From positions 186,001 to 250,000 of IMG/VR virus record IMGVR_UViG_3300048438_000153: a stretch of 64,000 nt of DNA; one strand, given 5' to 3'. Both the position numbers and the translations under genes were made by a program. Within the stretch, counting starts at the first letter, position 1. Each line of letters opens with the position of its first letter. The notes beneath the pieces are model-generated. The model saw only the letters and a program-made list of their open reading frames with translations, was not told the DNA's origin and searched no databases. Below are positions 7,470-52,089 of the stretch, piece by piece.

Positions 7470-7472
7470 ACG

Positions 7473-26864: not shown

Positions 26865-27983
26865 CTAGTTTCGATATTGAGCTTCCCATTTCTTTATGTC
26901 ATCTAACTCTTCTGGAGTCAGAGGTTCAGATAAGTTCAACTGATTGATTCCCTTTAAGACTTCCTTTTCTATTATAAGGGTACTAATAGTCATCAGTCTA
27001 GATCTCATACCCTGTAAGTATTTCCTACCGACCCTAACGATCTCTGCTCTAGTCTCTTCTCCTATTTCTGAAGGAAATAGCCCTTCAAACATGGAAGGGT
27101 CTGCGCTATCCAAGTAAGTCCCCACAATGTCTCGCGCGTAACTCTTAGCTTCAGCCTTAACTCTGTCTCTTAACCGACGCGCTTTAATAGAGCCTCTCAC
27201 GCTGAAGTCAACGTATTTCGCAGCCTCTTCAACCATCTCAGCAAGTTCACCATCATCCAAGACTGAAAAGGTTCTGCTTCTGATCTCCGCCTCAATATCT
27301 GAAGCTAGAGGATTGGCGCTAAAGAACTTCTTCACCCTAGCTCTTGGATGAAAACCTCTTCTTACGGGAGTCTCTGCGCTCGACCCTGAATCTTGAGCCT
27401 TTTGCCGAGATATTTCTCTCCGCCTCTCATCCCTAGACGTAACCCTCTTAGAAATGTCGGGCATCTTAGATGCTAAGTACTGAGGAAAGTATCTTCGAGC
27501 GACCATTGGAAGCACATTTTCTTTAAGAAAGGAAGATGCTCTAGAGTAAGCAGACTCGCCCCCATTCACAGCCTCTTCGAGTACTTCACTTGCATCGACG
27601 TATGGCGCAACAAGGCTTTTAAGTTTATCGTTTGTCGCTAGTTCTTTCATCTCATCGTAGTCGTAGAATGAGTCTAGAGCCCTAGAAATGTCCTGATTGG
27701 TAATCTGACTCAAAAGGCGAGTGACGAGGCTATTCTTTCTGCGAATCCTCCTCGCGTTACCTCCAATGAAAGCACCTTCACCCTCAGATCTGTACTGATC
27801 TACGAGGATCTTCTCAGACTTTCTCCATAGAGGTGTTTGAGTCACGAGATTATAGAGGATCGAAGCCATCTCCTCAGCGAGATTATCCTCAGAAAAACCA
27901 ATAGCATCGACTTTCGTGTAGTCGATATTAGAGGCGATATGGATACTCGCGACCCTACGCGCAAAAGCTCTTTTAGAAATCAT
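26865..27983 (-). CDS. Putative virion-packaged protein
   Basis: Leader MISKRAFARRVASIHIAS; AGGGAG RBS; late motif 28031-28046 and hairpin. Confidence 0.55.
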   Translation of the reverse strand: MISKRAFARRVASIHIASNIDYTKVDAIGFSEDNLAEEMASILYNLVTQTPLWRKSEKILVDQYRSEGEGAFIGGNARRIRRKNSLVTRLLSQITNQDISRALDSFYDYDEMKELATNDKLKSLVAPYVDASEVLEEAVNGGESAYSRASSFLKENVLPMVARRYFPQYLASKMPDISKRVTSRDERRREISRQKAQDSGSSAETPVRRGFHPRARVKKFFSANPLASDIEAEIRSRTFSVLDDGELAEMVEEAAKYVDFSVRGSIKARRLRDRVKAEAKSYARDIVGTYLDSADPSMFEGLFPSEIGEETRAEIVRVGRKYLQGMRSRLMTISTLIIEKEVLKGINQLNLSEPLTPEELDDIKKWEAQYRN

Positions 27984-28043
27984 TGTGATCACTCCCTAAG
28001 TGTTATTTCTTCAACTACCTGAGAGAGCGAGATAAAGACTCTA

Positions 28044-29021
28044 TTAAGAAACCCCTATGACCGACCAATCAAAGTCCCCAACCATCCCATTCGCCGAATA
28101 ATCTGTGACAGTACCCTCAAAGAAATTCTTCATGGAGTCTCCTGAGATGATCCAATCGAGCCAAGAAAGAGGGTTTTCTTTCTGCTTAAAGATCGGCTTC
28201 AAACCAAGCTGAAGCAGTCTACGATCTGCCAAGTACCTGACGTATGTCTTAATGTCCTGAGAGGTCAGCTCATTAATCGTGTCGTTTGATCCGTAGACGA
28301 GATCGACAAGCGCGTCCTCAAGCCCTACCGCTTTCGTGTAGTTCGTGTAGATGTAACTCTTGAGCTCATCTGTCACTACTTGAGGGTTCTCAGTGCAGTA
28401 TGTGTGAAAGAGCTTAGTCATACCCTCAACGTGTGTCGTCTCGTCACGGATAGACCATTCAACTACCTCACACATACCCTTCATCTTTCCGAATCTCTGA
28501 AAGTTGAGGAGCATCACGAAAGCAGAAAAGAGACTCATGCCCTCGTTACACACCGAGCGCGCCATCTCGAACGCCATGTGAGCTTCATCTGAAAGACCTT
28601 TTGGAGCTTCCATCATGAACTCGATCTTCTCTCTCATAGCATCAAACTCTAAGAAAGCTGAGTATTCTTTCTCTGCAAACCCGAGAGTGTCATTCAAGAG
28701 CGCATACGCCCTTTGATGAGTACCCTCGCGGTTGGCGAAAGAAAGAAGCATATTCCTCACTTCGTTATTCTTGAAGAAAGGAATAAAGACCTCACAGTAG
28801 TTACCACCAACTGCGACATCACTTTGAGTGAAGATTCTCAAAATCTGAGTAATGTGTTCTTTCTCAGACTTTGAGATTTCACTGCCCTTCCACTGAGAGA
28901 CATCCTCTTGGAGCTTGGCTTCCCAAGTACCCCAATGGATCTTCTCATGGTCTTCCGCAAAGGTCATCGCCCATGCGTACTGAAAGGGCTTATAAGTCTT
29001 ACTGAACTCTGTAAGAGACAT
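28044..29021 (-). CDS. nrdB: Class Ia ribonucleotide reductase beta subunit
   Basis: FTQSD, REGTHQRAY (radical Tyr), NEGMSLFSAF, RDETTH, NFFEGTVTDY. Confidence 0.96.
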   Translation of the reverse strand: MSLTEFSKTYKPFQYAWAMTFAEDHEKIHWGTWEAKLQEDVSQWKGSEISKSEKEHITQILRIFTQSDVAVGGNYCEVFIPFFKNNEVRNMLLSFANREGTHQRAYALLNDTLGFAEKEYSAFLEFDAMREKIEFMMEAPKGLSDEAHMAFEMARSVCNEGMSLFSAFVMLLNFQRFGKMKGMCEVVEWSIRDETTHVEGMTKLFHTYCTENPQVVTDELKSYIYTNYTKAVGLEDALVDLVYGSNDTINELTSQDIKTYVRYLADRRLLQLGLKPIFKQKENPLSWLDWIISGDSMKNFFEGTVTDYSANGMVGDFDWSVIGVS

Positions 29022-29106
29022 ATTTTATGTCCTCCTGTGTTGAAAGGGATAGCATAGTACCCTCTCGGAGAACATAAAAGAGCTAGTACCTGTTAAAGTA
29101 CCGATC

Positions 29107-29940
29107 TTAGAGGTAATCCCTCCGATACCTACGCCTAGCGAGCTTAACTTCCTTGTACGGAGGCTTCCACTCAATCTCACCCTCTTCCATCAGCTTTTGA
29201 GCTCTCGGCACTTCATCAGGGTTAATGACAGGCATATCAACTCGGGCGGGCGCCCAGCCTGGTACTTGCTTGTTCATCGCGCGAACATTTGCACCCATCT
29301 GCTTGATGCCTTCGTTGACAGAACCGAAGCTCTTAATGAGAATGTCCTGAACCTTCTTTGGTGAGGTGAACTCGTTACCGTTGATAGCGAGGTTCTTGAT
29401 CTCGTTCATCACATTCTGATCTGTGTAACGAGTGATGTCGCCCTTACCGGGATTCCCATTTCTCGTTGGGAAAAGACCCTTTGTGATGATGTTGAGAACC
29501 TTAAGAAGTGTCTTGCCCTCAAGGTCTGCGACATAACCCCCCACCTTGACATTAGGTCCGAAAGCGATGATGGCTGCTGACCATCTGTGGTGTCCGTCCA
29601 TAATCTGACCGTCATTAGAAATGATCGCACCAAGATCAGTAGTAAGCTTTCCATCAAGCATAGCGAGAGCCATACCCACAGACTTACCGAGAACCATTGT
29701 GGTCTGAGAAGGTTTGAGGTTGCTCGCTTGAGCCTTCGTCTTTCTCACAGAAATCTTATCGCTCTTGTTATCGCCTGAATCAACCAAGTGCTTAGCGAGA
29801 TCGGCATCTACGTTTGAAAGACGACCAGCGTTCTGAATCTCTCTATACACCTCTTCAGGCGCTAAGACACGAGCGGTGCGCTCCATACGAGCGACTCTTA
29901 TTTCTAAATCTCTAAGGACTTCTGATGCGGTTCTTCTCAT
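29107..29940 (-). CDS. ParB/Srx-like domain protein with putative capsid-targeting leader
   Basis: LKPSQ...IISNDGQIMDGHHRWSA; N-terminal MRRTASEVLRDLEIRVARMERTAR. Confidence 0.75.
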   Translation of the reverse strand: MRRTASEVLRDLEIRVARMERTARVLAPEEVYREIQNAGRLSNVDADLAKHLVDSGDNKSDKISVRKTKAQASNLKPSQTTMVLGKSVGMALAMLDGKLTTDLGAIISNDGQIMDGHHRWSAAIIAFGPNVKVGGYVADLEGKTLLKVLNIITKGLFPTRNGNPGKGDITRYTDQNVMNEIKNLAINGNEFTSPKKVQDILIKSFGSVNEGIKQMGANVRAMNKQVPGWAPARVDMPVINPDEVPRAQKLMEEGEIEWKPPYKEVKLARRRYRRDYL

Positions 29941-29945
29941 TTTTT

Positions 29946-30004
29946 TCTCCTTACCATAGGTGTATCGAGAAGTTGGTTTACTGCCTACGATAAAGAGATT
30001 AAGA
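29946..30004 (-). promoter_or_regulatory. Late-promoter-like motif (29989-30004) with 15 bp RBS-sequestering hairpin containing three G-U pairs
   Basis: UCUCUUUAUCGUAGG (29984-29998) pairs with CCUAUGGUAAGGAGA (29946-29960). Confidence 0.75.
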
Positions 30005-30009
30005 AACTA

Positions 30010-31734
30010 TCAGCCCTGACAACTCATACACTCATCTATTTGAAAGTCTTTGAGTGCCTTTCGCTCTACCTTTTCAGAGACTTTCTCTCCTGTAACACCC
30101 GCATTTGTCCTCAAATAATAAAGACCCTTGAGCTTCTTCTTATAAGCTGAGAGATGAACCGCGTTGACATAGTTCGCGTCGCTACCCGAAGGGAAAAAGA
30201 GGTTCACACTCTGCCCCTGACAGACCCACTCTTGCCTGACGCCCGCGTGTTCCACTACCCACATCTGATCAAGTTCAAACGCCGTCTTGAACACCTCTTT
30301 CTCAAGATCAGAAAAGTAGTCTAGATGCTGTACGCTCCCCTGATTCAGAATCACGTCAGAAATCTGCTCGTCTACCCAACTATCAGACTCGCCCTTCTCT
30401 TCTTTCTTCTTCTGAATTAGGTTCAGTAGATGTTCGTTCACCTGTAAGAAAGAACCTGCGCGCGTTCTGTAGGTGAAGGCATTAGACTTCCAAGGCTCAA
30501 TGCTAGGAGACGTATTCAGAATGATCGCCGAGTTCGCATTCGGAGCAATCGCGAGGAGATGGCTGTTTCTTACTCCGCTACCCTCACCGTCCAAGTACTC
30601 CCCTCTCTTCTCTGCGAGGGATCTCGTGGCGCTCAGAGCTTTCTCTTTGATGGTAGAGTAGATCTTCCTATTAGCAGACACCGCGAAGACCGACTCGAAA
30701 GGAACTCCTTTACTCTGAAGATACGAGTGAAAGCCCATCGTCCCTAAGCCGAGCGATCTCTCTTTCTTGGCGGAGCTGATGGCTCTAGAAAGAGACTCAG
30801 GCGCGTTCTCTATGAAATACTCTAAGACATCATCAAGGAACTCAATCAAGTCCTCTACAATCGTGGTTTCTTTCCAAGCGTCGAAGTGCTCCACATTAAG
30901 ACTAGAAAGACAACAAACCGCTGACCTGTTCTCTCCTGTTGGGAGATGAATTTCGTTACAAAGGTTAGATCCGTTAATCTTCAAGCCTTTCTCTTTGAGG
31001 GGCTCGGGGAGGTGGCGGTTAGCCTCGTCGATGAAGTTAAGATAAGGCTCACCTGTCTTGAAGCGCACCTTCAATATTCTCTGCCATAGGTCGCGAGCGT
31101 CGAAAGTGTCTCTCACTGACCCATCTGAAGGATCAAGCAAGTCCCAAGAGTCACCCTTAAGAACTGCCTCCATAAAGTCATCTGTGATATTGAGCGCGTT
31201 GTTGAGGTTGAAGCACTTTCTGTTAGTGTCTCCACCTGTAGGAAGTCTCATGTTAAGAAACTCAATCACGTCAGGGTGAGAGATGTTGAGGTAGGCTGCG
31301 TAGCTTCCCTTTCTAGTTGACCCTTGTCGATACGCAACCATATCCGCGTCAACGGTCTTAAGAAAAGGGATAGGTCCAGGTGACTTGTCTGAGACTGAGC
31401 GCACACTCGACCAATGCCCTCCAACACCACCTCCCATCACGCTCATCATTCTGAGCTCTTCTGTATGAGAAATGAGTCCCTTAACTGAGTCAGGAACAAA
31501 AGTGAGGAAGCAACTGATCGGCATACCTTTCCCCCCCGCGTTGGAGAGGATCGGTGAGCTGAACATGAACCACCCTTTGCAAGCGTACTCATAGATTCTT
31601 TCTGCGAGCCCTTCATCTCTCGCGTAAAAATGCGAGGCTCTCTTAAAAGCCTCTTGTGGATTCTCCTCACCTTCTTTCATGTAGTATTTCTTCAGTAGGG
31701 ACTTGGCGTGTGTTGAAAACTCGAAACCTGTCAT
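30010..31734 (-). CDS. nrdA: Class Ia ribonucleotide reductase alpha subunit, no ATP cone
   Basis: ISCF, GGGVG, SNLCNEI, AVCCLSS, LAIAPNA, GLYYLR, C-terminal CMSCQG; only 574 aa. Confidence 0.96.
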   Translation of the reverse strand: MTGFEFSTHAKSLLKKYYMKEGEENPQEAFKRASHFYARDEGLAERIYEYACKGWFMFSSPILSNAGGKGMPISCFLTFVPDSVKGLISHTEELRMMSVMGGGVGGHWSSVRSVSDKSPGPIPFLKTVDADMVAYRQGSTRKGSYAAYLNISHPDVIEFLNMRLPTGGDTNRKCFNLNNALNITDDFMEAVLKGDSWDLLDPSDGSVRDTFDARDLWQRILKVRFKTGEPYLNFIDEANRHLPEPLKEKGLKINGSNLCNEIHLPTGENRSAVCCLSSLNVEHFDAWKETTIVEDLIEFLDDVLEYFIENAPESLSRAISSAKKERSLGLGTMGFHSYLQSKGVPFESVFAVSANRKIYSTIKEKALSATRSLAEKRGEYLDGEGSGVRNSHLLAIAPNANSAIILNTSPSIEPWKSNAFTYRTRAGSFLQVNEHLLNLIQKKKEEKGESDSWVDEQISDVILNQGSVQHLDYFSDLEKEVFKTAFELDQMWVVEHAGVRQEWVCQGQSVNLFFPSGSDANYVNAVHLSAYKKKLKGLYYLRTNAGVTGEKVSEKVERKALKDFQIDECMSCQG

Positions 31735-33366: not shown

Positions 33367-33779
33367 GCTGTCTCCTCTCTTGTGACCCTTACCTATATCA
33401 GAACACCCATCAAGGTAAGAGATATCCATACAGGAGGTTATCTTAAGTTTCTGCTTGAACCTCGTCTCTGCCTCCGATATACAGGTTCACGATCTGACTC
33501 AACAACGGTTTGAGTCTCATGGGCTCTTCCCTCCGACTAGCGAAACTGAGGATAATCTTATCCCGACTAAAAGGAGGCAACCCTACTGAGCTTGAGAAAG
33601 CTCTTAGGGCAGAAACCCTCATGTGACGTAAGTCACTCGGTTGAAAAGCGTACCGATGGATCTCAATCAGTAACGAGACTCGGCAACTACTCTCTCAGAG
33701 TAAGTACCCTGTAGGTTGGTCAACTCCGTTGATAGAACCTGATAAACAGTCTGCTCTTTCTCACTCCCTTGATAGTCTC

Positions 33780-34280
33780 TTGTGAGCCTCTAGGTTTATT
33801 CTTTCCCTTACCTAGTAGGTTGTCTCAGATAGAAACTATCTTAGTATCTCTCTTTAGTAGAGATAGGAAGTATAGTTACTCTTCTAAGAAGAATATGAAT
33901 TAGAAGTAAGTAACTAGAGAAGACTTAGTAAGTCCTCCTAAAAACCAAAAGAAAAACTACTCGTACTACTACAAGTACTCTTACTAATCCTCAACCAACT
34001 ACACCTACAACTAATAGTCCTACTACTACAACAACACATACAGCTCATACTACAACAACTACTAGTCTTACTACATCTACAAGTAATACTACTCCAACTA
34101 GTACAGCTACACATACATGAACAGATACTATAGATGAACATACACTAAAAAAAGAAAGAAGTAGGTTAAGAAAGAACCTACTTATAGAAACTACTTTAGA
34201 AAAAAAAGACTATAGATAAGAAAGTACCTATATAGGTGACTTATAGGCTCCTACCTAGTGGAAGCATGAAAGAACACTAG
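33780..34280. other. AT-rich, strand-skewed low-complexity non-coding tract (candidate replication origin)
   Basis: G-poor CTA/ACT/ACA runs on the plus strand (about 33940-34150), several CTATAG-like words, palindrome ACCTATATAGGT at 34226-34237, between divergent genes. Confidence 0.5.
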
Positions 34281-34291
34281 GGATAAGAATC

Positions 34292-34590
34292 ATGATCGAC
34301 TTTTCAGAACAAAATCTAGATGATATGGACTTCGGAGGGATAGACCTATCAGGGTCTATCTTCAACACAAGCTCTCTTAAGAGGGCTAAGTTCATCGGAG
34401 GGACTTACAGGGACAGCCTGTTTGAAGAACTTCAACCTGATGATCTAGAGGATAATGAGCTTTCCCCATCAGATTTTTCAGGAGCACTTTCGTGAGATTC
34501 TCGATTGCAGATGGGACGACCTTCTATAAGTGTGACTTCAAGTATGTCACGCTGACGCGCTGTATCCGAAACCGCGTCAAAGGGATCTGA
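34292..34590 (+). pseudogene. Pentapeptide-repeat protein interrupted by a 1 nt frameshift
   Basis: FSEQN LDDMD FGGID LSGSI FNTSS LKRAK...DFSGA. Continues in the -1 frame FVRFSIADGTTFYKCDFKYVTLTRC to TGA 34590, 2 nt before the next ATG. Confidence 0.65.
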
Positions 34591-34592
34591 TC

Positions 34593-34997
34593 ATGTGGTT
34601 AAGAAAGTTCAGAGCGAACACAGAAAGTAAACCGCCCGAGCTACTCGCTGTAGAGTTTCCGAAGGCTCTAGAGAATCACATCAAAGAGCTTCTCTCTCTG
34701 AGGAATCAGTTCTACAAGACTTTTGATCGGAAAGTAGAGTCGGCGCTGAAAGAACACGCTGTGACAGGGCTGATCAATCTCTATCACTCTTATTTAGAGA
34801 GTACGCCCCTACACGACTACATAAAGACCTCTCTCAACGGCGTAGTGATTAGCCGAGAAGGAGGCGTCACTCGATACGCCCTCTCAGAAGCCTCATACGC
34901 GCTTCTAAGCAAGGTTGTCGAAGAGAGAGGTGTCAGTGCCTCAGCGAGAGTCTATTTCCTCCCTGAAGGGGTTATAGACGTCGTTGAGAATTCTTAA
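34593..34997 (+). CDS. Hypothetical protein (134 aa)
   Basis: Clean ORF, convergent with the next gene. Confidence 0.6.
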   Translation: MWLRKFRANTESKPPELLAVEFPKALENHIKELLSLRNQFYKTFDRKVESALKEHAVTGLINLYHSYLESTPLHDYIKTSLNGVVISREGGVTRYALSEASYALLSKVVEERGVSASARVYFLPEGVIDVVENS

Positions 34998-40604: not shown

Positions 40605-41060
40605 ATGTGGTTGACATACCTAATCTTATCTGTTTTTCTAACCACATTAGCCCACGAGTACAGTCATGTCGGTATGGCTCAACTCTTAGTAGGTGTAGAT
40701 CAATACTCCATCAAACCCTTCATCCATAAACACAAAGAATTAGGGCTTGTAGGAGGATCTGTCTCAATCACTTATAAGAGAGCAAGAACAAAGTCAGAAG
40801 AAGCTTGGATTGCCTTCGCCCCACGCCTCACTAATGCTCTCTTCTTAATACTCCTACCGTTCACTGTCGATAAAGGATCTCTAGTGATCATCTTAGTAGC
40901 TACATTAGGATGCTACGATATGCTCAGGGGATCACTCCCCAATGACTCTGACTGTAAAGTCTATTGCAGTCATTGGAGGGTGAGTCCTTACCTAGTCAGG
41001 TACTATCAGCTCACTCTTTCTTATGTGAGCTTCCTCACCTTTCTACTCAGGCTTTCTTAG
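40605..41060 (+). CDS. Membrane zincin-like metallopeptidase (HExxH)
   Basis: TM then LAHEYSH, IAFAP, second hydrophobic hairpin, NDSD; GAGGAG RBS. Confidence 0.65.
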   Translation: MWLTYLILSVFLTTLAHEYSHVGMAQLLVGVDQYSIKPFIHKHKELGLVGGSVSITYKRARTKSEEAWIAFAPRLTNALFLILLPFTVDKGSLVIILVATLGCYDMLRGSLPNDSDCKVYCSHWRVSPYLVRYYQLTLSYVSFLTFLLRLS

Positions 41061-44000
41061 AGGATCACAAAGTTGATCGTGATCACACTGTCTGCGTTAA
41101 TCTGAGAACCTATCCTGTTGACAAGGCTGAACTCGAAGCTCGTAGCGTTCGTGATCGAATGCGCGTATACCTCGATACCGCCCTCAGCGAGAATGTCTCC
41201 TCCATTATCAGCAGAGGCCACTGTAGCCATGATGACGCTTGTAGATAACACTGAAGTGTTATTGACCACAAATCCGATTGAGTGAGCATCATCTGCTATC
41301 GCGGTATCGGTTGTCACCGCGACTTGGAAAGCCTTAGTGTTGGTGCTAAAGAGAGGCGCGTTAGTCACGCCCTCGTCACCTGTAAGACCTGTAGTCTTAG
41401 CGACTGTAAGACCACCGTTCTTGACATTCAAGCTACCTACGTCAAGGGGAGCGAGATCTGAGTCAGGAACGGAATAAGATGCAGCCGGCTCAGTTATGTC
41501 AGCTCGACCATGAAAAATCTTAAACGCGCCTGACTTACCGCCTACGGTGTTGTCTACCTCATATACGACACCCATAAGGAAGTCAGCAAAGTTAGAATCA
41601 CCGTAAGCACCTACAAAACCGAGATCGCGAGTTGATGCTGTATTAGTGTAGCCCACATATAGGGTAGGGTCTTTGAATCTTAAAGACCCTGAAACCGCGC
41701 TGTTTCCTGTGATCACACCTGTGACATCAAGATCGCCCGAGAGAGTCACTTTCTGATCTGCTGTCAGAGTGATCGTAGTCTCTCCGTCTGAGTTCTGAAT
41801 GACGTTATTCCCAAGAATAAGGTTACTGCCTGTCTCTACCTCGCCCGTAAACGTAGCCTTGTTTGCAGAGCTAAGAGTCAGAACAGTTGAAAGAGCACCC
41901 GCATTATCTCCACCTGTCTGAAAGATAACCGAACCGCCTGTGCCTGTCCCATTACCAACACCCGAGGAAATAGTGAGGTTCTCACCTACGGTGTCTTCGT
42001 CAGTCTGAGTAGTCACAGAAATAGAGGTCGCGTTGCTTCCATCACCTAGAGCTACACCTCCACCGCTAACAGTAAGACTGTTCGATGTGAGTGACCCTGT
42101 AGTTGAAAGGTTCTCATCTCCGAAAGAAATAACCCCCCCCGAGTCGGTAATAGAACCGTCAGCAAGAGTAAGAGTTCCAACAGATGAGCCTGAGACTCCC
42201 TCAGACACTTTCCCGAAGACTACTTTCTCACCTTCATTCGTGGTGACGAACTTGAGGTAAGAGTTAGCTCCCTCTGCGATGTCGAGAGCAGTCGCCTGAG
42301 CATCCGTAAGACTGATAGAAATGGTATTTCCATCGGCGGAGATACTATCTAGGGAGATATCGCCTACGTTAGTGATGTCTCCATCAGCAACACTTAACGA
42401 GGTAACAGTGGTTGCGCCCGCTCCGAGAGTTCCCGTAGTTGAGAGGTTCTCATCTCCAAAGGAAATAGCTCCGCTTGAGTCAGTAATAGAGCCGTCAGCG
42501 AGAGTAAGAGTTCCAACTGTCGAGCCTGAGACTCCCTCAGAAACCTTTCCGAAGACTACCTTCTCACCAGCGTCAGTTGTTACGAACTTGAGGTAAGAGT
42601 TAACACCCTCTGTGATATCAAGTGATGATGCTTGGTTATCAGTGAGGTTAAGGGTGATCGCGTTTCCGTCAGCAGAAATACTATCGAGAGCAATATCCCC
42701 TACGTTAGTGATGTCCCCATCAGTAACACTTAACGAGGTAACAGTGGCAGACCCCGCCCCGAGAGTACCTGTAGTAGAAAGGTTCTCGTTCCCAAAGGAA
42801 ATCGCGCCCCCTGAGTCGGTGATCGACCCGTCAGCGAGAGTAAGAGTTCCAACTGTCGAGCCTGAGACTCCCTCAGAAACCTTCCCGAAGACTACCTTCT
42901 CATCAGCGTCAGTGGTGACGAACTTGAGGTAAGAGTTAGCTCCCTCAGTAATGTCGAGTGAAGACGCTTGGTTATCAGTGAGGTTAAGGGTGATCGAGTT
43001 CCCGTCAGCAGAAATACTATCGAGAGCAATATCCCCTACGTTGCTGATGTCTCCATCAGCAACACTTAATGAAGTGACAGTGGTTGCGCCCGCCCCGAGA
43101 GTACCTGTAGTAGAAAGGTTTTCGTCCCCAAAGGAAACAGCGCCCCCTGAGTCAGTAATCGAGCCATCAGCGAGAGTAAGAGTTCCAACAGACGATCCTG
43201 AGACTCCCTCAGACACCTTCCCGAAAACTACCTTCTCATCAGCGTCTGTAGTTACGAACTTGAGGTAAGAGTTAGCTCCCTCAGTAATGTCGAGTGAAGA
43301 CGCTTGGTTATCAGTGAGACTGATGGAAATGGTATTTCCGTCAGCAGAAATACTATCTAGGGCGATGTCCCCTACGTTGGAGATGTCCCCATCAGTAACA
43401 CTTAATGAAGTGACAGTGGTAGCTCCCGCGCCGAGAGTACCTGTTGTCGAGAGGTTCTCGTCCCCGAAAGAAATAGCTCCACTTGAGTCAGTGATCGACC
43501 CATCAGCAAGAGTAAGATCTCCAAAGGTAGATCCTGTTGCTCCCGAGACTGTGCCTGTAGCCTCAAGAGTGCTGACAAGTAAACCAGCCTTAGAAAGACC
43601 CACAACACCTGAGAAGTCGGTAGTAGTTCCATTTACCGCACCGCTGTGAGTGCCTAGTAAGAATTTACCTTCACCCTCATCCCAAATGATAAGAGCATCG
43701 TCCTCAAGACCTCTATTCAGGAAGATCCCGATATCAGAGTTATTGTTATTATCCCCAATGTCCTTGTTGAGCTCAATCACTTGATCTGCAACAGAAAGGT
43801 TGGTTGTACTGATGATAGTCTGAGTGCCGTTTACGGTAATGTTCGTACAGGTGATAGAACCTGTAGTGGTCAGGTTCTCATCATCAAAAGTGATTGTCCC
43901 ACCTGTGGAGGTAATAGAACCGTCAGCGAGAGTAAGAGTCCCTACGGTAGACCCTGAAGCAAGTGTAGCCACCCCCGCTCCGAGAGTACCTGTGGTAGAA

Positions 44001-46471
44001 AGGTTCTCATCCCCGAAAGAAATCGAACCACCTGAGTCAGTGATCGAACCATCGGCAATAGTAAGAGTTCCAACAGACGATCCTGAGACTCCCTCAGAAA
44101 CCTTCCCGAAGACTACCTTCTCATCAGCGTCAGTTGTTACGAACTTGAGGTAAGAGTTAGCTCCCTCAGTGATGTCGAGAGCAGTCGCCTGAGCATCTGT
44201 TAAAGAGATGGTGAGGGTGTCTCCATCGGCGGAGATACTATCGAGGGCGATATCCCCTACATTCGTGATGTCCCCATCAGTAACACTTAACGAGGTAACA
44301 GTGGTTGCGCCCGATCCGAGAGTTCCCGTAGTTGAGAGGTTCTCATCTCCAAAGGAAATCGCGCCCCCTGAGTCAGTAATCGAGCCATCAGCGAGAGTAA
44401 GATTTCCAACAGACGATCCTGAGACTCCCTCAGAAACCTTCCCGAAGACTACCTTCTCATCAGCGTCAGTTGTTACGAACTTGAGGTAAGAGTTAACACC
44501 CTCAGTGATGTCGAGAGCCGTTGCTTGAGCATCCGTAAGACTGATAGAAATGGTATTCCCATCAGCAGAAATACTATCAAGGGCGACATCACCTACGTTA
44601 GTGATATTTCCGTCAGTAACACTTAATGAAGTGACAGTGGCAGACCCCACTCCGAGAGTTCCCGTAGTTGAGAGGTTCTCGTTCCCGAAAGAAATAGCTC
44701 CACCTGAGTCAGTAATAGAGCCGTCAGCGAGAGTGAGAGTTCCTACGGTAGACCCTGAGACTCCCTCAGACACTTTCCCGAAGACTACCTTCTCACCTTC
44801 ATTCGTGGTGACGAAGTTAAGGTAAGAGTTACCCGCTTCTGTGATATTGAGCGCGGTAGCTTCGTTATCCGTCAAAGTGATGGTGAGGGCACTGCCGTCA
44901 GCAGAAATGCTGTCGAGGGCGATATCCCCTACGTTAGTGATATTTCCGTCAGTAACACTTAATGAAGTGACAGTGGTAGCCCCCGCGCCGAGAGTACCTG
45001 TTGTCGAGAGGTTCTCGTTCCCAAAGGAAATAGCGCCCCCTGAGTCGGTAATCGACCCGTCAGCGAGAGTAAGAGTTCCTACGGTAGATCCTGAAGCAAG
45101 TGTGGCTACCCCCGCGCCGAGAGTTCCCGTAGTTGAGAGGTTTTCGTTCCCGAAAGAAATAGCTCCACCTGAGTCAGTAATCGACCCGTCAGCGAGAGTA
45201 AGAGTTCCTACGGTAGACCCTGAGACTCCCTCAGAAACCTTTCCGAAGACCACTTTCTCACCTGCGTCAGTTGTTACGAACTTGAGGTAAGAGTTAACAC
45301 CCTCAGTAATGTCGAGTGAAGACTCTTGGTTGTCTGTAAGGCTGATAGAAATGGCATTTCCGTCAGCAGAAATGCTATCTAGGGAGATATCGCCTACATT
45401 CGTGATATTTCCGTCAGTAACACTTAATGAAGTGACAGTGGTTGCTCCAGCTCCGAGAGTACCTGAAGTTGAGAGGTTCTCATCCCCGAAAGAAATCGAA
45501 CCGCCTGAGTCAGTAATCGAGCCATCAGCGAGAGTAAGAGTTCCAACTGTCGAGCCTGAAGCAAGTGTAGCCACACCCGCTCCGAGAGTTCCCGTAGTTG
45601 AGAGGTTCTCATCCCCGAAAGAAATCGCCCCACCTGAGTCAGTGATCGACCCGTCAGCGAGAGTAAGAGTCCCTACGGCAGACCCTGAGACACTCTCAAA
45701 TACTTTCCCGAAGACCACTTTCTCACCCTCGTCAGTTGTTACGAACTTGAGGTAAGAGTTAGCTCCCTCAGTAATGTCAAGAGACGACGCTTGATTGTCC
45801 GTAAGACTAATAGAAATGGTGTTGTTATCGGCGGAGATACTATCTAGGGCGATGTCCCCCACGTTAGTGATGTTTCCTTCGTTAACATTAAGAGATCCAA
45901 GAGAGAGAGTCCCTGATGTAAAGTCAGCGTTCCAAGAGTTGTCATTCTCGGTCACGTCAGCAGTACCTAGAGCGAAATAGTTGTTCTCTTCATCGAAATA
46001 GAAAACGCCAGGGTTCTGAGCCCCACCACCCTCTCCATCAGTCTGAAGTGGTCGTGTGAAGATGATGCCGATGGAGTCTCCGTTTGTTCCATTCGCATCG
46101 TGGGCGTTACCCTCACTCCCATCAGCCAAGACGATAACTCTATCCTGAACGAGAAGATCATTCGTAGTATTCTGAGTGGTTACGTTAAGTGTCCCAGGAA
46201 TAGAAATGATCGAGTTGGCTTGACCTAATGTGATCGTGTTGGCTCCAAGAGTAGGACCAATCACGATTGATCCTGTCACCCCTATGTTTGAGGTGATTGA
46301 AGCATTGTTAGACATATCGGCGCGAAGAAGGTCTGCGCCTCCCGCATCTGCGCCGTTGTGGACGCGGATAGACTCAGTAGTGGTATCTACCGTGACCTCA
46401 CCGATTGCGCCCGTAAAGGCATTGTTCTCAGCAGTAGTGCCTCTGCGTAATTGTACTCTTCTTACAGCCAT
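41057..46471 (-). CDS. Long tail fibre with Mtd-N-like N-terminus and modular repeats (1804 aa)
   Basis: VQLRRGTTAENNAFTGAIGEVTVDT N-terminal fibre-attachment motif; G/S/T/D-rich repeats. Confidence 0.85.
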   Translation of the reverse strand: MAVRRVQLRRGTTAENNAFTGAIGEVTVDTTTESIRVHNGADAGGADLLRADMSNNASITSNIGVTGSIVIGPTLGANTITLGQANSIISIPGTLNVTTQNTTNDLLVQDRVIVLADGSEGNAHDANGTNGDSIGIIFTRPLQTDGEGGGAQNPGVFYFDEENNYFALGTADVTENDNSWNADFTSGTLSLGSLNVNEGNITNVGDIALDSISADNNTISISLTDNQASSLDITEGANSYLKFVTTDEGEKVVFGKVFESVSGSAVGTLTLADGSITDSGGAISFGDENLSTTGTLGAGVATLASGSTVGTLTLADGSITDSGGSISFGDENLSTSGTLGAGATTVTSLSVTDGNITNVGDISLDSISADGNAISISLTDNQESSLDITEGVNSYLKFVTTDAGEKVVFGKVSEGVSGSTVGTLTLADGSITDSGGAISFGNENLSTTGTLGAGVATLASGSTVGTLTLADGSITDSGGAISFGNENLSTTGTLGAGATTVTSLSVTDGNITNVGDIALDSISADGSALTITLTDNEATALNITEAGNSYLNFVTTNEGEKVVFGKVSEGVSGSTVGTLTLADGSITDSGGAISFGNENLSTTGTLGVGSATVTSLSVTDGNITNVGDVALDSISADGNTISISLTDAQATALDITEGVNSYLKFVTTDADEKVVFGKVSEGVSGSSVGNLTLADGSITDSGGAISFGDENLSTTGTLGSGATTVTSLSVTDGDITNVGDIALDSISADGDTLTISLTDAQATALDITEGANSYLKFVTTDADEKVVFGKVSEGVSGSSVGTLTIADGSITDSGGSISFGDENLSTTGTLGAGVATLASGSTVGTLTLADGSITSTGGTITFDDENLTTTGSITCTNITVNGTQTIISTTNLSVADQVIELNKDIGDNNNNSDIGIFLNRGLEDDALIIWDEGEGKFLLGTHSGAVNGTTTDFSGVVGLSKAGLLVSTLEATGTVSGATGSTFGDLTLADGSITDSSGAISFGDENLSTTGTLGAGATTVTSLSVTDGDISNVGDIALDSISADGNTISISLTDNQASSLDITEGANSYLKFVTTDADEKVVFGKVSEGVSGSSVGTLTLADGSITDSGGAVSFGDENLSTTGTLGAGATTVTSLSVADGDISNVGDIALDSISADGNSITLNLTDNQASSLDITEGANSYLKFVTTDADEKVVFGKVSEGVSGSTVGTLTLADGSITDSGGAISFGNENLSTTGTLGAGSATVTSLSVTDGDITNVGDIALDSISADGNAITLNLTDNQASSLDITEGVNSYLKFVTTDAGEKVVFGKVSEGVSGSTVGTLTLADGSITDSSGAISFGDENLSTTGTLGAGATTVTSLSVADGDITNVGDISLDSISADGNTISISLTDAQATALDIAEGANSYLKFVTTNEGEKVVFGKVSEGVSGSSVGTLTLADGSITDSGGVISFGDENLSTTGSLTSNSLTVSGGGVALGDGSNATSISVTTQTDEDTVGENLTISSGVGNGTGTGGSVIFQTGGDNAGALSTVLTLSSANKATFTGEVETGSNLILGNNVIQNSDGETTITLTADQKVTLSGDLDVTGVITGNSAVSGSLRFKDPTLYVGYTNTASTRDLGFVGAYGDSNFADFLMGVVYEVDNTVGGKSGAFKIFHGRADITEPAASYSVPDSDLAPLDVGSLNVKNGGLTVAKTTGLTGDEGVTNAPLFSTNTKAFQVAVTTDTAIADDAHSIGFVVNNTSVLSTSVIMATVASADNGGDILAEGGIEVYAHSITNATSFEFSLVNRIGSQINADSVITINFVIL
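42090..45890. repeat. Nine 336 bp (112 aa) units, some with an extra 129 bp (43 aa) module
   Basis: Equivalent positions at 42260, 42596, 42932, 43268, 44153, 44489, 44825, 45290, 45755 (spacings 336/336/336/885/336/336/465/465). Confidence 0.92.
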
Positions 46472-46532: not shown

Positions 46533-49500
46533 CTAAACCACTAAGACCCCGTAGTCGTCAGCGCAGTAGAGTACCGTGTCAGCCACCGAGCCGAAATCAA
46601 TGTTAAAGTCACCCTCCCCGAAAGCGTCGGCTACCGAGCCGTAGTCGATGACTTCCATGACTCGACCATAGATTACGAGGTCGCCTCCAACGAGAGCGTT
46701 CGGGTTCAGAGAAATACTCTGAGACGTAATCACAGGACTCTCGTTAACGTCTGTACCTATAGTTGGAACAGTACCCGGCTCAAATCTACTGTTGTTGGCG
46801 TTGTAGACAAGACCCTGACCATCGGCCAAATCAGTCAAGTCAACATCGGAGTGCGTTTCAACTGAGCCCAAGACGGTAAGATTTGAGCCATCTAACGCCC
46901 CTAACTTACCTTCTCCATCTGTAACAACCGCCTTGCCGTTCTCACCACCTCCGCCATTAATAGTAGTGTCGAGTGTAGAAGCAGAGCCGAGTCCTAAGTT
47001 GCCTCTCGCTACCGCTTCATTTCCCCCATCAGAAATCTCAGAAAGACTGTTGCCGACCTGAAGCAAGTCTGAAATGTCTGTAGTCGCTGTTGAAGTAAGA
47101 CCGAGAGTAGACCTAGCTGTCGCGGAATCCGCGTCATCCAAAAGTGTTCTCGCAAAGGCTGTTACATCAGCCTCAGCCCAAGTATCTACTCCTGTAGTAT
47201 ATATGAGCTTATCAGCGCCCGTCCCGAGATCAGAAATAGCACTCAAGGTGGCGTCAAAAGCTTGGACGTCAGTGTCGATCTCTAACCCAAGAGTAGTTCG
47301 AGCCGTCGCTGAGTCAGCGTCATCTAAGAGTGTCCTAGAGAAAGCAGAAAGGGTGGCTTCAGCCCAAGTATCTACTCCCGTAGTATATATGAGCTTGTTA
47401 GCGCCTGTCCCGAGATCAGAAATACTCTGAAGAGTAGCATCGTAGGCTTGGACGTCAGTGTCGATCTCTAACCCAAGAGTAGTTCGAGCCGTCGCTGAGT
47501 TAGCGTCATCTAAGAGAGATCTAGCGAACGCCGTAAAGATGGTGATTGAGAAAGTATCTACGCCACTTGCATAAATGAGTCTATCAGCGCCCGTATTAAC
47601 ACCAGCTAAAGCTTGTAATGTAGCATCATAAGCCTGAACATCAGAGCCGATCTCAACACCTAAGTTACCCCTCGCATTCGCGACGTTATCTAAGTCATTA
47701 AGATTATTAGCTGACTGAAGAAGATTGCCAATGTCTGTTGTGGCTGTCGAAGTGAGGCCGAGGGTAGTTCTCGCTGTGTTAGCATCAGCATCGTCTAAGA
47801 GTGTTCTAGAGAAAGCAGAAAGGGTGGCCTCAGCCCAAGTGTCTACTCCCGTAGTGTAAGCGAGCTTATCAGCCCCCGTTCCGAGCGCGGAGAGAGAAGC
47901 TAACGTCGCATCGTAGGCTTGAATATCAGTGTCGATCTCTAACCCAAGAGTAGTTCGAGCGGTCGCTGAGTTAGCATCGTCTAAGAGTGTCCTAGAGAAA
48001 GCAGAAAGGGTGGCTTCAGCCCAAGTGTCTACTCCCGTAGTATATATGAGCTTATCAGCTCCCGTCCCGAGATCAGAAATAGCACTCAAGGTGGCGTCAA
48101 AAGCTTGAACGTCAGACCCGATAGCGACACCGAGATTAGCCCTCGCATTCGCGACGTTATCTAAGTCATTAAGATTGTTAGCTGACAGAAGAAGATCAGC
48201 GAGGTCTGTTGTCGCAGTAGGGGTAAGACCGAGGGTCGCTCTAGCATCTGCTGAGTTAGCGTCATCTAAGATTGTTCTAGCGAAAGCAGAAAGAGTTGCT
48301 TCAGCCCAAGTATCCAATCCCGTAGTATATATGAGCTTATCAGCTCCCGTTCCGAGATCAGAAATAGCACTCAAGGTGCTGTCGAGAGGCTGATAAGTGT
48401 TTGCGAGATCCAAGTCTGTGATCTCTGCTTGAACATAAGCAGTAGTGGCGACGAGAGTTGAATCATCACCGAGATCAGGGCTTTCCACTCTTAATGGAGA
48501 AAGAGTCAGGTTGGCGTCATTAAACTCTGTGGCGGTGTGGGCATCAGTGGTCGTGCCTAGCTTGAACGTGTCTGTGCTCTCGTCAAAAAAGAACACCGCG
48601 TCATTTCCCGTAGTCCCACGCTCGAAGAAAAGACCGATGTCATTGGGGTTAGCTCCGCCATCAACGCCTTTATTAAGTCTGACAATCGTATCTTCTACAT
48701 CTAGTGTAGAAGTGTTGACTGTTGTCGTGTCGCCCTGAACTTGAAGATCACCACTTACGATAACCTTCGACCCAACACCTCCGAGCGTTAAGACTGAAGG
48801 GTTGCCATTATTGGTAGTCATCGTCGCGCCGATTGTTGCATCTGCGTTGGTGAAGTCGATTCCTGTCATGCCACTAAGAGTTGTGGAAGCCCCTCCCAAA
48901 GAAATGGATGTTGAACCTACAGTCAAAGAGCTGTTCGCGAGCTTATCGTTCGTGACGTCTCCATCAACAATCTTAGCAGTCGTAACAGAGTCGGCATCGA
49001 GCTTCGCCTCAGTGACGTTCCCATCTACGATTTTAGCCGTAGTAACGGAGTCAGCGTCGAGCTTCGCTTCAGTGATGTTGCCGTTCAAAATCTTAGCGGT
49101 GGTTACAGCATCGTTACTTATGGTAGCCAAGCCCTCGTTGGAGATAGAAACATCACCCGAGAGAGATACGTTCTTCCATTGATTGTCGTCCGCACCCCCA
49201 TCGGAGTCGTAGACGATAATCTGAGCGTCTGCGACGTCGGCGAGGAGGACATCGTTGAGGTCATCGAGGCTAGAGACGTTGCCTGCTGCTTGCATGACGT
49301 CATTGACCCACTCAGTAGTCGCTACTGTAGTGTCATCAGAGGCGAGGTCAGGAGTTGCTGAAGTAAGAGTACCCACCTCAAAGTTATATGCGAAAGCCCC
49401 GAAAGTAGTAGCTCTTGTGGTGAGCGCGATGCTTGCGTTGTCTGAGAGGTTAGACGTAGAAATCGTCTGATTCGCAAAACCACCATTTCCTGTACTCACT

Positions 49501-52031: not shown

Positions 52032-52040
52032 ATCGAACTC

Positions 52041-52089
52041 CTTTATATGTCTCTCTTCTTTCTCCAAGAGACATATAAAGACTTAATCA
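52041..52089 (-). promoter_or_regulatory. Late-promoter-like motif (52074-52089) with 14 bp RBS-sequestering hairpin
   Basis: Perfect inverted repeat 52041-52054 / 52067-52080 pairing the AAAG of the RBS for the fibre gene. Confidence 0.75.

What the first reader, a model, noticed from the sequence alone, without database searches (positions are those of the whole stretch)
29107..30004. Late-expressed ParB-like protein with a capsid-type leader inserted between nrdA and nrdB
Seen: the RNR subunit genes are separated by a ParB/Srx-domain gene (DGHHRW) with its own late motif, the clearest G-U-containing RBS hairpin, and a leader MRRTASEVLRDLEIRVARMERTAR. The hairpin would silence it on nrdA read-through mRNA. 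Inference: a packaged, ejected nucleotide-binding enzyme (NTPase or nuclease) acting at the start of the next infection.
Basis: partly seen in the sequence, partly recalled or inferred. Interest (0 to 1): 0.6.

Follow-up and report, generated by a model that had tools for sequence, protein, structure and literature searches.

The report
Address-tagged ParB/Srx protein between RNR genes
A 277-residue ParB/sulfiredoxin-fold protein of an uncultured 275-kb phage carries a short N-terminal tag shared with a dozen unrelated proteins of the same genome. It also has its own promoter-like motif and an RNA hairpin that hides its ribosome-binding site, so it is most likely a tagged internal capsid protein, though nothing here shows that directly.

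Summary
Window 29107-29940 (-) encodes a 277-aa protein between nrdA and nrdB. It has an invariant DGHHRW motif and a confident ParB/Srx-fold model, but no Pfam, NCBIfam or named relative. At least 409 relatives occur on viral contigs.

Its first ~22 residues recur at the N-terminus of at least 12 other, otherwise unrelated ORFs of the genome. In other lineages the same core carries different tags, at either end. In a complete T4-like relative the homolog lies in the head module and ends with the same ten-residue motif as the scaffold-like protein next to the capsid gene.

The tag begins with [RK]-x-A-S. This tetrapeptide is about 5-fold over-represented in the proteome and 6-fold denser in head-module proteins.

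The gene has a promoter-like motif shared with the capsid operon, tail-fibre and lysis-like genes, but also with nrdB and two helicases. A 15-bp hairpin pairs the sequence just after that motif with the Shine-Dalgarno. The hairpin is kept, with different stem sequences, in relatives.

Packaging, late timing and enzymatic activity remain inferred. I read it as a new variant of known kinds: T4 capsid-targeting sequences, T4 late-gene hairpins and packaged ParB-like proteins.

The parts
29107..29940 (-). CDS of the 277-aa ParB/Srx-fold protein (P0001)
   Evidence: ORF list and translation. AF2 model with mean pLDDT 93. More than 200 metagenomic homologs and at least 409 on IMG/VR contigs.
29869..29940 (-). 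N-terminal tag A (residues 1-24): MRRTASE followed by an amphipathic helix with L/I at heptad positions
   Evidence: The same tag starts 12-13 other ORFs of the genome (HMM E 5e-15 to 3e-6). Synonymous variation is abundant. Modelled as helix 5-22 at pLDDT 75-85. Tag-A paralogs are also present in related fragments G003-G005.
29467..29757 (-). ParB/Srx N-domain-like core (about residues 62-158), with LKPSQTT, DGHHRW and LNIxTKG at the positions of ParB boxes I-III
   Evidence: VIA-align: sulfiredoxin Z 6.4, SerK Z 5.8, KorB 5.2, SbnI 5.0, PadC 5.0. Foldseek PDB top hits are ParB N-domains. The BFVD top hit is annotated ParB/Sulfiredoxin, E 8e-9, TM 0.61. Invariant columns are listed. The box assignment is my inference.
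29581..29598 (-). DGHHRW motif (residues 115-120)
   Evidence: Read directly from the sequence. Invariant in 75 homologs. It is the only stretch that a profile search matches to solved SerK and 1vk1 chains.
29998..30011 (-). Promoter-like motif 1 (GATAG-TTTC-TTAAT), overlapping the nrdA stop codon
   Evidence: PWM score 17.6 bits, 77 nt before the ATG. The same box and core are kept in relatives L028, L009, L030 and L031.
29984..29998 (-). 5' arm of the hairpin (anti-Shine-Dalgarno TCTCTTT plus extension), starting at the last base of the motif core
   Evidence: Fold. The architecture is conserved, with different stem sequences, in relatives.
29946..29960 (-). 3' arm of the hairpin, containing the Shine-Dalgarno AAGGAG (29947-29952)
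   Evidence: Fold. In an RNA that lacks the 5' arm only 3 bases of the SD remain in a weak 3-bp stem, and the fold is no better than shuffles (-6.9 kcal/mol, z -1.15).
29933..30006 (-). Outer 7-bp stem (30000-30006 with 29933-39) that also buries the AUG
   Evidence: Fold.
30010..31734 (-). nrdA (class I RNR large subunit), the upstream neighbour and source of any read-through RNA
   Evidence: Pfam PF02867 and PF00317. No terminator-like site on the - strand between nrdA and the gene.
28044..29021 (-). nrdB (RNR small subunit), the downstream neighbour
   Evidence: Pfam PF00268.
29022..29090 (-). nrdB 5' region with its own motif 1 (29074-29085) and a hairpin pairing anti-SD with SD
   Evidence: PWM 15.3 bits. 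Fold -24.9 kcal/mol, z -3.65.
26865..27992 (-). 375-aa gene after nrdB, with a tag-B-like N-terminus (RRVAS) and motif 1: a second tagged gene in this block
   Evidence: N-terminus. PWM 20.3 bits. Regex scan. Fold of its 5' region.

Best explanation
The gene encodes a virus-specific, uncharacterised branch of the ParB/sulfiredoxin fold. It is most likely an NTP-binding enzyme or switch, and which nucleotide and which reaction is unknown.

Its first ~24 residues are not part of the enzyme. They are a lineage-specific address tag, analogous to the T4 capsid-targeting sequence. The tag would dock this protein and about a dozen unrelated proteins into the scaffold core of the assembling prohead, so that they are packaged with the DNA and can enter the next host. 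The [RK]-x-A-S element at the start of the tag is probably a site for the head-maturation protease.

Expression is gated in two ways. The gene has its own copy of the promoter-like motif that also precedes the capsid operon, tail-fibre and lysis-like genes. The sequence immediately after that motif is an anti-Shine-Dalgarno. RNA read through from nrdA would therefore fold into a hairpin that hides the SD and AUG, while RNA started at the gene's own promoter would lack the anti-SD and be translated. This is the design known for T4 genes e, soc and 49.

Shown here: the fold, the tag's recurrence, the motif, the hairpin and its conservation. Inferred: packaging, cleavage, timing, transcription start and activity.
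For: Fold:
- AF2 pLDDT 93.
- The top eight VIA matches are all ParB/Srx proteins.
- Foldseek PDB top hits are ParB N-domains.
- A full-length BFVD match is annotated ParB/Sulfiredoxin, E 8e-9.
- DGHHRW is invariant.

Tag:
- 12-13 further ORFs start with it, under peptide-level selection.
- Their remaining sequences are unrelated and mostly unknown; one has a WGR domain.
- Related phage fragments have tag-A paralogs too.

Portability:
- About half of 201 family members carry one of six recognisable tags, at the N-terminus, the C-terminus or both.

Link to the head:
- G001 is a complete T4-like phage with gp23 and a gp21-type protease. Its homolog lies 2.8 kb downstream of the capsid gene.
- That homolog ends with ERWxxLAGIxK, as does the acidic 689-aa scaffold-like protein encoded directly upstream of the capsid gene.
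- It also starts with a leader shared by at least 12 G001 ORFs. Two of these are small ORFs between the protease and capsid genes.
- In the window's own genome [RK][TLIVM]AS occurs 77 times, against 16 +/- 4 in shuffles.
- Internal copies are 6.4-fold denser in the head module, p 4e-11, with five copies in the scaffold-like protein.

Co-regulation:
- 11 of 13 tag-A genes carry motif 1, against 37 of 249 other genes, p 1.6e-7.
- Motif 1 also precedes the capsid operon, tail fibres and holin-like genes.
- DNA polymerase, RecD-like and RecA-like genes carry a different motif.

Hairpin:
-.
- Conserved architecture with different stems in six relatives.
- Genome-wide, motif-1 genes have more SD sequestration than other genes (0.35 vs 0.48 unpaired, p 7e-4). 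They also gain more when truncated at a guessed start (p 6e-4).

Precedents:
- T4 CTS (PMC3012670 and PMC5694885).
- Head-packaged ParB-like DdrB of P1 (PMC5512222).
Against: - There is no virion, proteomic or transcript evidence.
- No prohead protease was identified in this genome, so the cleavage idea has no enzyme.
- A cut at the N-terminal RTAS would remove only about 5 residues. The window's protein has no second [RK]-x-A-S site after the helix.
- Motif 1 also precedes nrdB and two helicase genes, so it need not be strictly late or structural.
- The major capsid protein has no tag.
- The transcription start is guessed by analogy. If it lies upstream of the anti-SD, the hairpin forms on every transcript.
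- Covariation rests on only two or three independent stem versions.
- A complex prediction of the G001 C-terminal tag with its capsid protein gave no verdict.
- In the closest relatives the gene always sits between nrdA and nrdB, which could instead point to a role in nucleotide metabolism.
Confidence: 0.45

Rival explanations
1. The protein is a cytoplasmic nucleotide-metabolism enzyme that works with ribonucleotide reductase and is never packaged. It could be, for example, a SerK/SbnI-like small-molecule kinase or an NTP-sensing regulator. The N-terminal helix would be a docking or oligomerisation helix that assembles several phage proteins into a complex, comparable in idea to the T4 dNTP-synthetase complex.
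For: - nrdA-X-nrdB synteny holds in all tag-A relatives down to 52% identity.
- nrdB shares the same promoter motif and hairpin design.
- The only two-domain structural matches are the free serine kinases SerK and SbnI.
- A distant homolog sits beside NUDIX and nucleotidyltransferase genes.
- The tag has a heptad pattern typical of coiled coils (sequence).
Against: - Synteny is lost outside the clade. The homolog follows a 1788-aa protein in L015 and sits in the head module in G001.
- The other tag-A cargos show no metabolic domains.
- One tag type is shared with a scaffold-like protein.
- The tag's first four residues belong to a motif enriched in head-module proteins.
- Tags at either terminus, and different in each lineage, fit an address better than a fixed enzyme interface.
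Confidence: 0.2
2. The tags address proteins to some other phage-built structure rather than the capsid interior. Candidates are the outside of the capsid, the tail, a membrane or vesicle, or a cytoskeletal or compartment structure. The ParB/Srx protein would act there on phage DNA during replication or packaging.
For: - An actin-like gene lies among the tag-A genes.
- Several motif-1 genes encode membrane or signal-peptide proteins.
- No tag receptor is known.
- ParB-fold proteins classically act on intracellular DNA (PMC12704722).
Against: - No shell or nucleus-type protein was seen, though none was searched for specifically.
- The scaffold-shared C-terminal motif and head-module position in G001, and the head-module enrichment of the tag's first motif, point to the prohead.
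Confidence: 0.15
3. The hairpin is not a read-through silencer. It would be part of every transcript of the gene: either a 5' stem that stabilises the mRNA, or a translational operator opened by a phage factor, temperature or upstream translation. The 'motif' would then partly reflect the anti-SD sequence rather than a promoter.
For: - The core region TCTTT is complementary to the genome's common SD, AAAGA/GGAG.
- No transcription start is mapped.
- In L037 the anti-SD lies upstream of the motif.
- For several motif-1 genes, including nrdB, the SD stays paired even in the truncated RNA.
Against: - The TAG box and its fixed spacing are not explained by SD complementarity.
- Many motif-1 genes, including the tail-fibre genes, have the motif without any SD pairing.
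- Strand and position specificity is strong: 48 of 73 hits sit in the 40-100 nt upstream window.
- In relatives the box and core are conserved while the stem sequence changes.
Confidence: 0.3

Closest known systems
T4 capsid-targeting sequence (CTS) of internal proteins IPI-III and Alt, and the N-terminal propeptides of phiKZ/SPN3US head proteins
   Same: A short N-terminal peptide is the only thing shared by otherwise unrelated proteins of one phage. In T4 it directs them into the scaffold core and is removed by the prohead protease (PMC3012670; PMC5694885). Here at least 13 ORFs share tag A. The T4-like relative G001 has a leader containing I-x-E, the T4 protease site type from my own knowledge, on at least 12 ORFs.
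   Different: - Tag A is longer (about 22 residues), is a predicted amphipathic helix and is unrelated in sequence.
- No protease or cleavage has been shown.
- Equivalent tags in other lineages sit at the C-terminus or at both ends, which is more like encapsulin cargo-loading peptides or scaffold C-termini than the T4 CTS.
- Packaging is untested.
Translational gating of T4 late genes e, soc and 49 by hairpins (established T4 biology, from my own knowledge)
   Same: The SD and AUG are buried in a hairpin on RNA started upstream. A late promoter sits in or at the 5' arm, so late RNA is open. Here the motif core abuts the anti-SD.
   Different: The design is used many times across the genome, in roughly a dozen clear cases that include nrdB. 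The promoter consensus differs from the T4 TATAAATA. Starts and timing are unmapped.
Packaged ParB/Srx-domain proteins: P1 DdrB and DdrB-like ParB domains of polyvalent proteins (Iyer et al. 2017, PMC5512222)
   Same: A ParB/Srx-fold domain in a phage protein that is, or is predicted to be, carried in the head and delivered with the DNA.
   Different: Profile comparison with P1 DdrB finds no relation. This protein is a small solo protein with a helical C-domain and no peptidase domain. It is tagged rather than fused.
Free serine kinases SerK (5x0b) and SbnI (5ujd), and sulfiredoxin
   Same: Best structural matches (Z 5.0-6.4). SerK and SbnI align over both domains. The I-x-DGHHRW stretch matches SerK and 1vk1 in a profile search. 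In these proteins the fold binds ATP/ADP (PMC12704722).
   Different: Sequence identity is 8-15% and Z is below 8. Catalytic residues were not checked. Four homologs give only sub-threshold DUF1015 hits. There is no evidence of kinase activity.
Canonical ParB/Noc/KorB CTP-dependent DNA clamps
   Same: The N-domain fold, with conserved residues at the box I-III positions.
   Different: No PF02195 or TIGR hit. No HTH or dimerisation domain was detected. The arginine patch GERRxRA is replaced by DGHHRW.

Membership tests
ParB/sulfiredoxin (ParB/Srx) fold superfamily | Alpha/beta N-domain fold shared by ParB, Srx, SerK and Osa | tested here: met
   The top 8 VIA-align matches are all members (Z 4.0-6.4). 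Foldseek PDB top hits are ParB N-domains (E 0.01-0.04). A BFVD full-length match is annotated ParB/Sulfiredoxin (E 8e-9, TM 0.61). Scores against solved structures are moderate.
ParB/sulfiredoxin (ParB/Srx) fold superfamily | Conserved arginine-containing motif at the nucleotide or active-site pocket (GxxR, HHR, CHR) | tested here: met
   DGHHRW is invariant in 75 homologs and aligns to the DGHHRW of SerK and 1vk1.
ParB/sulfiredoxin (ParB/Srx) fold superfamily | Match to the curated sequence model PF02195 (ParB_N) | tested here: not met
   No Pfam hit for the protein or any of 75 homologs at E <= 1. No NCBIfam hit. This is a divergent branch seen only by structure.
ParB/sulfiredoxin (ParB/Srx) fold superfamily | Binds or hydrolyses a nucleotide | not testable with these tools
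   Needs purified protein.
Canonical ParB CTPase DNA clamp | HTH DNA-binding domain, C-terminal dimerisation domain and GERRxRA box II | tested here: not met
   No such domains in Pfam or NCBIfam scans. Box II reads DGHHRW. The C-terminal half is a helical domain aligned only to SerK and SbnI.
SerK/SbnI free serine kinases | Two-domain architecture with the ParB/Srx N-domain | tested here: inconclusive
   SerK aligns to model residues 50-246 (Z 5.8, rmsd 4.7) and SbnI to 62-260 (Z 5.0, rmsd 6.0). The Z scores are too low to claim membership.
SerK/SbnI free serine kinases | Catalytic base and serine-binding residues | not tested
   No residue-level structural alignment was available.
DdrB-like ParB domains (phage P1 DdrB, polyvalent proteins) | Sequence-profile relatedness to the P1 DdrB N-terminal domain | tested here: not met
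   hhalign of the 75-sequence profile against P1 DdrB: probability 0.6%, no ParB-region alignment. The target was a single sequence, so sensitivity is limited.
Capsid-targeting-sequence (CTS) cargo / internal head proteins | A short terminal peptide shared by otherwise unrelated proteins of one phage | tested here: met
   Tag A occurs on 13 ORFs, and the rest of those proteins is unrelated. The same holds for leader E in G001.
Capsid-targeting-sequence (CTS) cargo / internal head proteins | Removal by the prohead protease at a consensus site also present in scaffold and head proteins | tested here: inconclusive
   [RK][TLIVM]AS starts the tag. It is 5-fold enriched in the proteome and 6-fold denser in the head module, including the scaffold-like protein. 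No protease gene was found and no cleavage data exist.
Capsid-targeting-sequence (CTS) cargo / internal head proteins | Physical presence inside the virion | not testable with these tools
   The phage is uncultured and no proteome exists.
T4-type hairpin-gated late genes | SD and AUG sequestered on upstream-initiated RNA, open on RNA from the gene's own promoter | tested here: inconclusive
   Met in silico and conserved in relatives. The transcription start and the timing are unmapped.

The most novel reading that the evidence does not exclude
Huge uncultured phages use a modular system of short, lineage-specific address peptides. These can sit at the N-terminus, the C-terminus or both ends, and in at least one lineage the peptide is identical in type to the scaffold protein's own C-terminus. 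The peptides would load a set of cargo proteins into the prohead, and this ParB/Srx-fold protein would be the one cargo conserved across many lineages. That would make it a widespread, previously unrecognised ejected protein of aquatic phages.

A more speculative extension: it could be a SerK-like kinase acting on the head-enriched R-x-A-S motif.
Probability: 0.35. Interest if true: 0.78.

Novelty: new variant of a known kind. Interest (0 to 1): 0.62.

Why it matters
If the tags are capsid addresses, the packaged and ejected proteins of uncultured huge phages could be read directly from sequence. These proteins are otherwise invisible without virion proteomics, and they are where anti-defence and take-over functions tend to sit.

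The reading would also give portable peptides for loading foreign proteins into capsids, as the T4 CTS does. It would single out a virus-specific ParB/Srx protein, present on hundreds of viral contigs, as a conserved first-minute effector worth biochemical study.

The promoter plus anti-SD design would be a genome-wide version of a control known from only a few T4 genes.

Tried and rejected
- **Sequence models.** Pfam, NCBIfam and a PDB profile search gave nothing beyond the DGHHRW stretch. PHROGs gave only an unknown-function family.
- **P1 DdrB.** Relatedness was rejected by hhalign.
- **Alignment-based covariation.** RNAalifold on a MAFFT alignment of the 5' regions found no structure, because the alignment was not structure-aware. 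I replaced it with per-sequence folds and a cognate versus non-cognate arm-pairing test. One arm, L029, was mis-anchored at a contig end.
- **Complex prediction.** The G001 capsid protein with the homolog's C-terminal tag gave no verdict (score 0.14). This counts neither for nor against binding.
- **Prohead protease.** PF03420 and Pfam scans of head-module ORFs found none in this genome.
- **Leader paralogs in G001 and G002.** A whole-protein search found none. A direct scan of G001 then found at least 12. G002 was not scanned further.
- **T4 late promoter.** TATAAATA is absent near the G001 homolog, which is uninformative.
- **Cultured relatives with virion proteomes.** None were found.
- **Literature.** Text searches for the tag strings found nothing relevant.
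- **Tat signal.** The idea that MRR marks a Tat signal was dropped because no hydrophobic stretch follows.
Full report
**What is there**

The window is bases 186001-250000 of a 275,102-bp IMG/VR virus record, estimated 88% complete. It carries the portal, an intein-bearing terminase, PhoH, two tail-fibre-like giant proteins and replication genes. The major capsid protein lies just outside the window at genome 182994-183872. The only close relative in the phage collection is an uncultured 485-kb phage.

The finding's gene is ORF 29107..29940 on the minus strand, 277 aa. It lies between nrdA (30010..31734) and nrdB (28044..29021), both confirmed by Pfam. DGHHRW is residues 115-120.

**The protein**

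No Pfam, NCBIfam or informative PHROG model matches it or its homologs. It nevertheless has more than 200 metagenomic relatives and at least 409 on IMG/VR viral contigs. ESM Atlas clusters of look-alikes are 96-100% viral.

An AlphaFold2 model built from 75 homologs is confident, with mean pLDDT 93. Against solved structures, the eight best VIA-align matches are all ParB/Srx-fold proteins:
- sulfiredoxin, Z 6.4
- SerK, Z 5.8
- KorB, Z 5.2
- SbnI, Z 5.0
- PadC, Z 5.0
- Atu1540, Z 4.9
- human Srx (NMR), Z 4.7
- pNOB8 ParB, Z 4.0

Foldseek's top rows are ParB N-domains. In BFVD a full-length viral protein annotated ParB/Sulfiredoxin matches at E 8e-9, TM 0.61.

The invariant residues include LKPSQ, DGHHRW, an Asn in helix 142-156 and a GNPGKG loop. 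By my reading the first three lie where ParB boxes I-III lie. Only SerK and SbnI align across both domains. A profile search of PDB sequences matches SerK and 1vk1 only at I-x-DGHHRW.

I therefore accept the ParB/Srx fold and a nucleotide-binding role. This fits the recent survey showing that the fold binds CTP, ATP or GTP in different families (PMC12704722). Whether it is an NTPase, nuclease or kinase is open. It is not detectably related to P1 DdrB.

**The leader is a shared tag**

A search of the whole genome with the protein found short N-terminal matches in other ORFs. An HMM of the leader then found 12-13 ORFs that begin with M-R-R-T-A-S-E followed by an L..LE.R(I/V)A.LE helix, at E 5e-15 to 3e-6. 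The proteins are 87-364 aa and otherwise unrelated. One has a WGR domain and the rest have no family.

Codon comparison shows hundreds of synonymous differences across the leaders, so the peptide is what is conserved. Related phage fragments also have extra tag-A ORFs.

The same genome has two further N-terminal motif classes on other ORFs: an R-R-V-A-S type and an L-I-R-x-A-Y-x-N-P type. The 375-aa gene just after nrdB carries one of them.

**Tags are portable**

Homologs of the ParB/Srx core in other lineages lack tag A and carry other peptides. These include the two classes above, an L-T-A-S-D...L-I-R-L-A-S class, an M-K-L-T..Q-L-R-R-I-I-R-E-E class and an E-R-W-x-K-L-A-G-I-x-K class. These peptides occur at the N-terminus, at the C-terminus or at both. 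Of 201 family members, 98 carry at least one recognisable tag. The same cargo with different tags at either end argues for an address function rather than a part of the enzyme.

**Link to the head**

G001 is a complete 297,894-bp phage with a T4-type capsid protein and a gp21-type protease. Its head module reads, in order:
1. portal
2. a 285-aa ORF
3. protease
4. two small ORFs of 138 and 81 aa that begin with the local leader
5. two further ORFs
6. an acidic 689-aa scaffold-like protein
7. the capsid protein
8. homing endonucleases
9. a 114-aa leader-bearing ORF
10. the ParB/Srx homolog

The homolog and the scaffold-like protein end with the same E-R-W-x-x-L-A-G-I-x-K motif. It is found in only three ORFs of that genome. 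At least 12 G001 ORFs begin with the local leader.

In the window's own genome, the tetrapeptide [RK][TLIVM]AS that opens tags A and B occurs 77 times, against 16 +/- 4 in composition-preserving shuffles. Copies away from N-termini are 6.4-fold denser in proteins encoded at 181-209 kb, which holds the capsid, scaffold-like, portal and terminase genes, than elsewhere (p 4e-11). There are five copies in a Met- and acid-rich 681-aa scaffold-like protein and six in the 866-aa protein at window 11986-14586.

This is the pattern expected of a maturation-protease site, as in T4 and phiKZ/SPN3US (PMC5694885). However, I found no protease gene, and an R-x-x-S kinase site is an alternative reading.

T4 literature describes internal proteins as diverse proteins sharing only a capsid-targeting sequence (PMC3012670). 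P1 DdrB is a precedent for a head-borne ParB-like protein (PMC5512222).

**Promoter-like motif**

K-mer enrichment and an iterated weight matrix give the motif TAG-N4-T(T/A)(T/A)AT. Of 73 genome hits at 11 bits or more, 48 lie 40-100 nt upstream of a same-strand start codon, a window that is about 3% of the searched sequence.

Its gene set includes:
- the capsid operon, both tail-fibre giants, holin-like and signal-peptide proteins, and 11 of 13 tag-A genes, against 37 of 249 others (p 1.6e-7)
- but also nrdB and two helicase genes

Two other motif classes exist. One precedes small ORFs at both genome ends. The other, (T/C)TGATAT(A/G), precedes the DNA polymerase, RecD-like, RecA-like and SNF2 genes. 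Motif 1 is thus a distinct class that leans structural and late, but 'late' is an inference.

nrdA has no motif at the usual distance. For the finding's gene the best register is GATAG-TTTC-TTAAT at 29998-30011 (17.6 bits), overlapping the nrdA stop codon.

**Hairpin**

The 87-nt RNA from the nrdA stop to codon 5 folds into a 15-bp stem with three G-U pairs. The stem joins 29984-29998 to 29946-29960 and includes the SD. An outer 7-bp stem covers the AUG. Free energy is -20.9 kcal/mol, z -3.1. In an RNA lacking the 5' arm only 3 bases of the SD remain paired, in a weak 3-bp stem, and the fold is no better than shuffles (-6.9 kcal/mol, z -1.15). No terminator-like site separates nrdA from the gene.

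In relatives of 94, 81, 66 and 52-65% protein identity, the TAG box and core are kept. The segment directly after the core is again an anti-SD that pairs with the SD, but the stem extensions differ in sequence. Cognate arms pair better than arms from the other stem version: mean -18.8 against -12.7 kcal/mol.

Genome-wide, motif-1 genes have a less accessible SD in the long RNA than other genes (0.35 against 0.48, p 7e-4). They also gain more accessibility when truncated 7 nt after the core (p 6e-4). About a dozen genes show clear motif-to-SD hairpins, and nrdB has one of -24.9 kcal/mol. The design matches what is known for T4 genes e, soc and 49 (my own knowledge). The start site is a guess.

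**Synteny**

nrdA-X-nrdB is conserved in every tag-A relative examined. One relative has an intein in nrdA, and another has an extra ORF and a 160-residue insert between tag and core. Outside the clade the gene sits beside NUDIX and nucleotidyltransferase genes, after a 1788-aa protein, or in the head module. The RNR position is therefore lineage-specific.

**Verdict**

The fold, tag, motif and hairpin are real and non-random. Capsid targeting is the best explanation but rests on indirect, comparative evidence. Late timing, cleavage, ejection and activity are untested.

I could not obtain read data, and a complex prediction gave no verdict.

Noticed in passing
window 29022-29090 (-): nrdB has its own copy of the promoter-like motif (TAG-CTCT-TTTAT, 29074-29085). 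A hairpin pairs the core and the following GTTCTCC with the SD GGAGGAC (-24.9 kcal/mol, z -3.65). An RNR subunit gene thus shares the regulatory design of the structural genes, while nrdA does not.
   Followed up: partly
whole genome; in the window upstream of 26803 (RecD-like helicase), 23463 and 63120 (RecA-like): There are two further promoter-like motif classes. (T/C)TGATAT(A/G) precedes replication and recombination genes. A long GGTATTGGTGAGGTA...TAAGAGTAA motif precedes small ORFs at both genome ends. Together with motif 1 this suggests three temporal classes.
   Followed up: partly
window 675-22620 and genome 181-209 kb: The tetrapeptide [RK][TLIVM]AS is about 5-fold over-represented in the proteome and 6.4-fold denser in head-module proteins. 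There are 6 copies in the 866-aa protein at window 11986-14586 and 5 in the scaffold-like 681-aa protein at genome 184640-186685. It is a candidate maturation-protease or kinase site.
   Followed up: partly
window 26865-27992 (-): The 375-aa gene after nrdB starts with a second tag type (K-R-A-F-A-R-R-V-A-S), has a strong motif 1 (20 bits) and gives a sub-threshold ATP-cone hit (E 0.035). The same tag type starts several other ORFs and occurs on ParB/Srx homologs of other lineages.
   Followed up: partly
window 7473-10607 (-): The large terminase is 1044 aa. Residues of about 100-545 match intein-containing helicases of unrelated phages, so it probably carries an intein. The relative L028 has a LAGLIDADG intein in nrdA that this genome lacks.
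   Followed up: no
L124 (G001:240001-260000) 6636-7619 and 12353-14422: In a complete T4-like phage, the ParB/Srx homolog and the acidic scaffold-like protein upstream of the capsid gene end with the same E-R-W-x-x-L-A-G-I-x-K motif. Thirteen homologs from other contigs carry it at the C-terminus and two at the N-terminus.
   Followed up: partly
genome 136369-137364 (outside the window): An actin-like (D-I-G-T motif) gene lies inside the cluster of tag-A and motif-1 genes at 132-151 kb.
   Followed up: no
window about 33650-34600: An AT-rich strand-switch region holds short imperfect tandem repeats of period 13-24. A low-complexity Cys/Ser ORF there is probably not a gene. The region may hold divergent promoters or an origin.
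   Followed up: no
L009 6001-7314 (P0004), also P0008 and P0013: Some close homologs (377-437 aa) have about 100-160 extra residues inserted between tag A and the ParB/Srx core, and a second T/V-A-S site right after the tag helix.
   Followed up: no
window 41057-46471 and 46533-52067 (-): Two adjacent proteins of about 1800 aa give tail-fibre and tail-protein PHROG hits, and each is preceded by motif 1.
   Followed up: no
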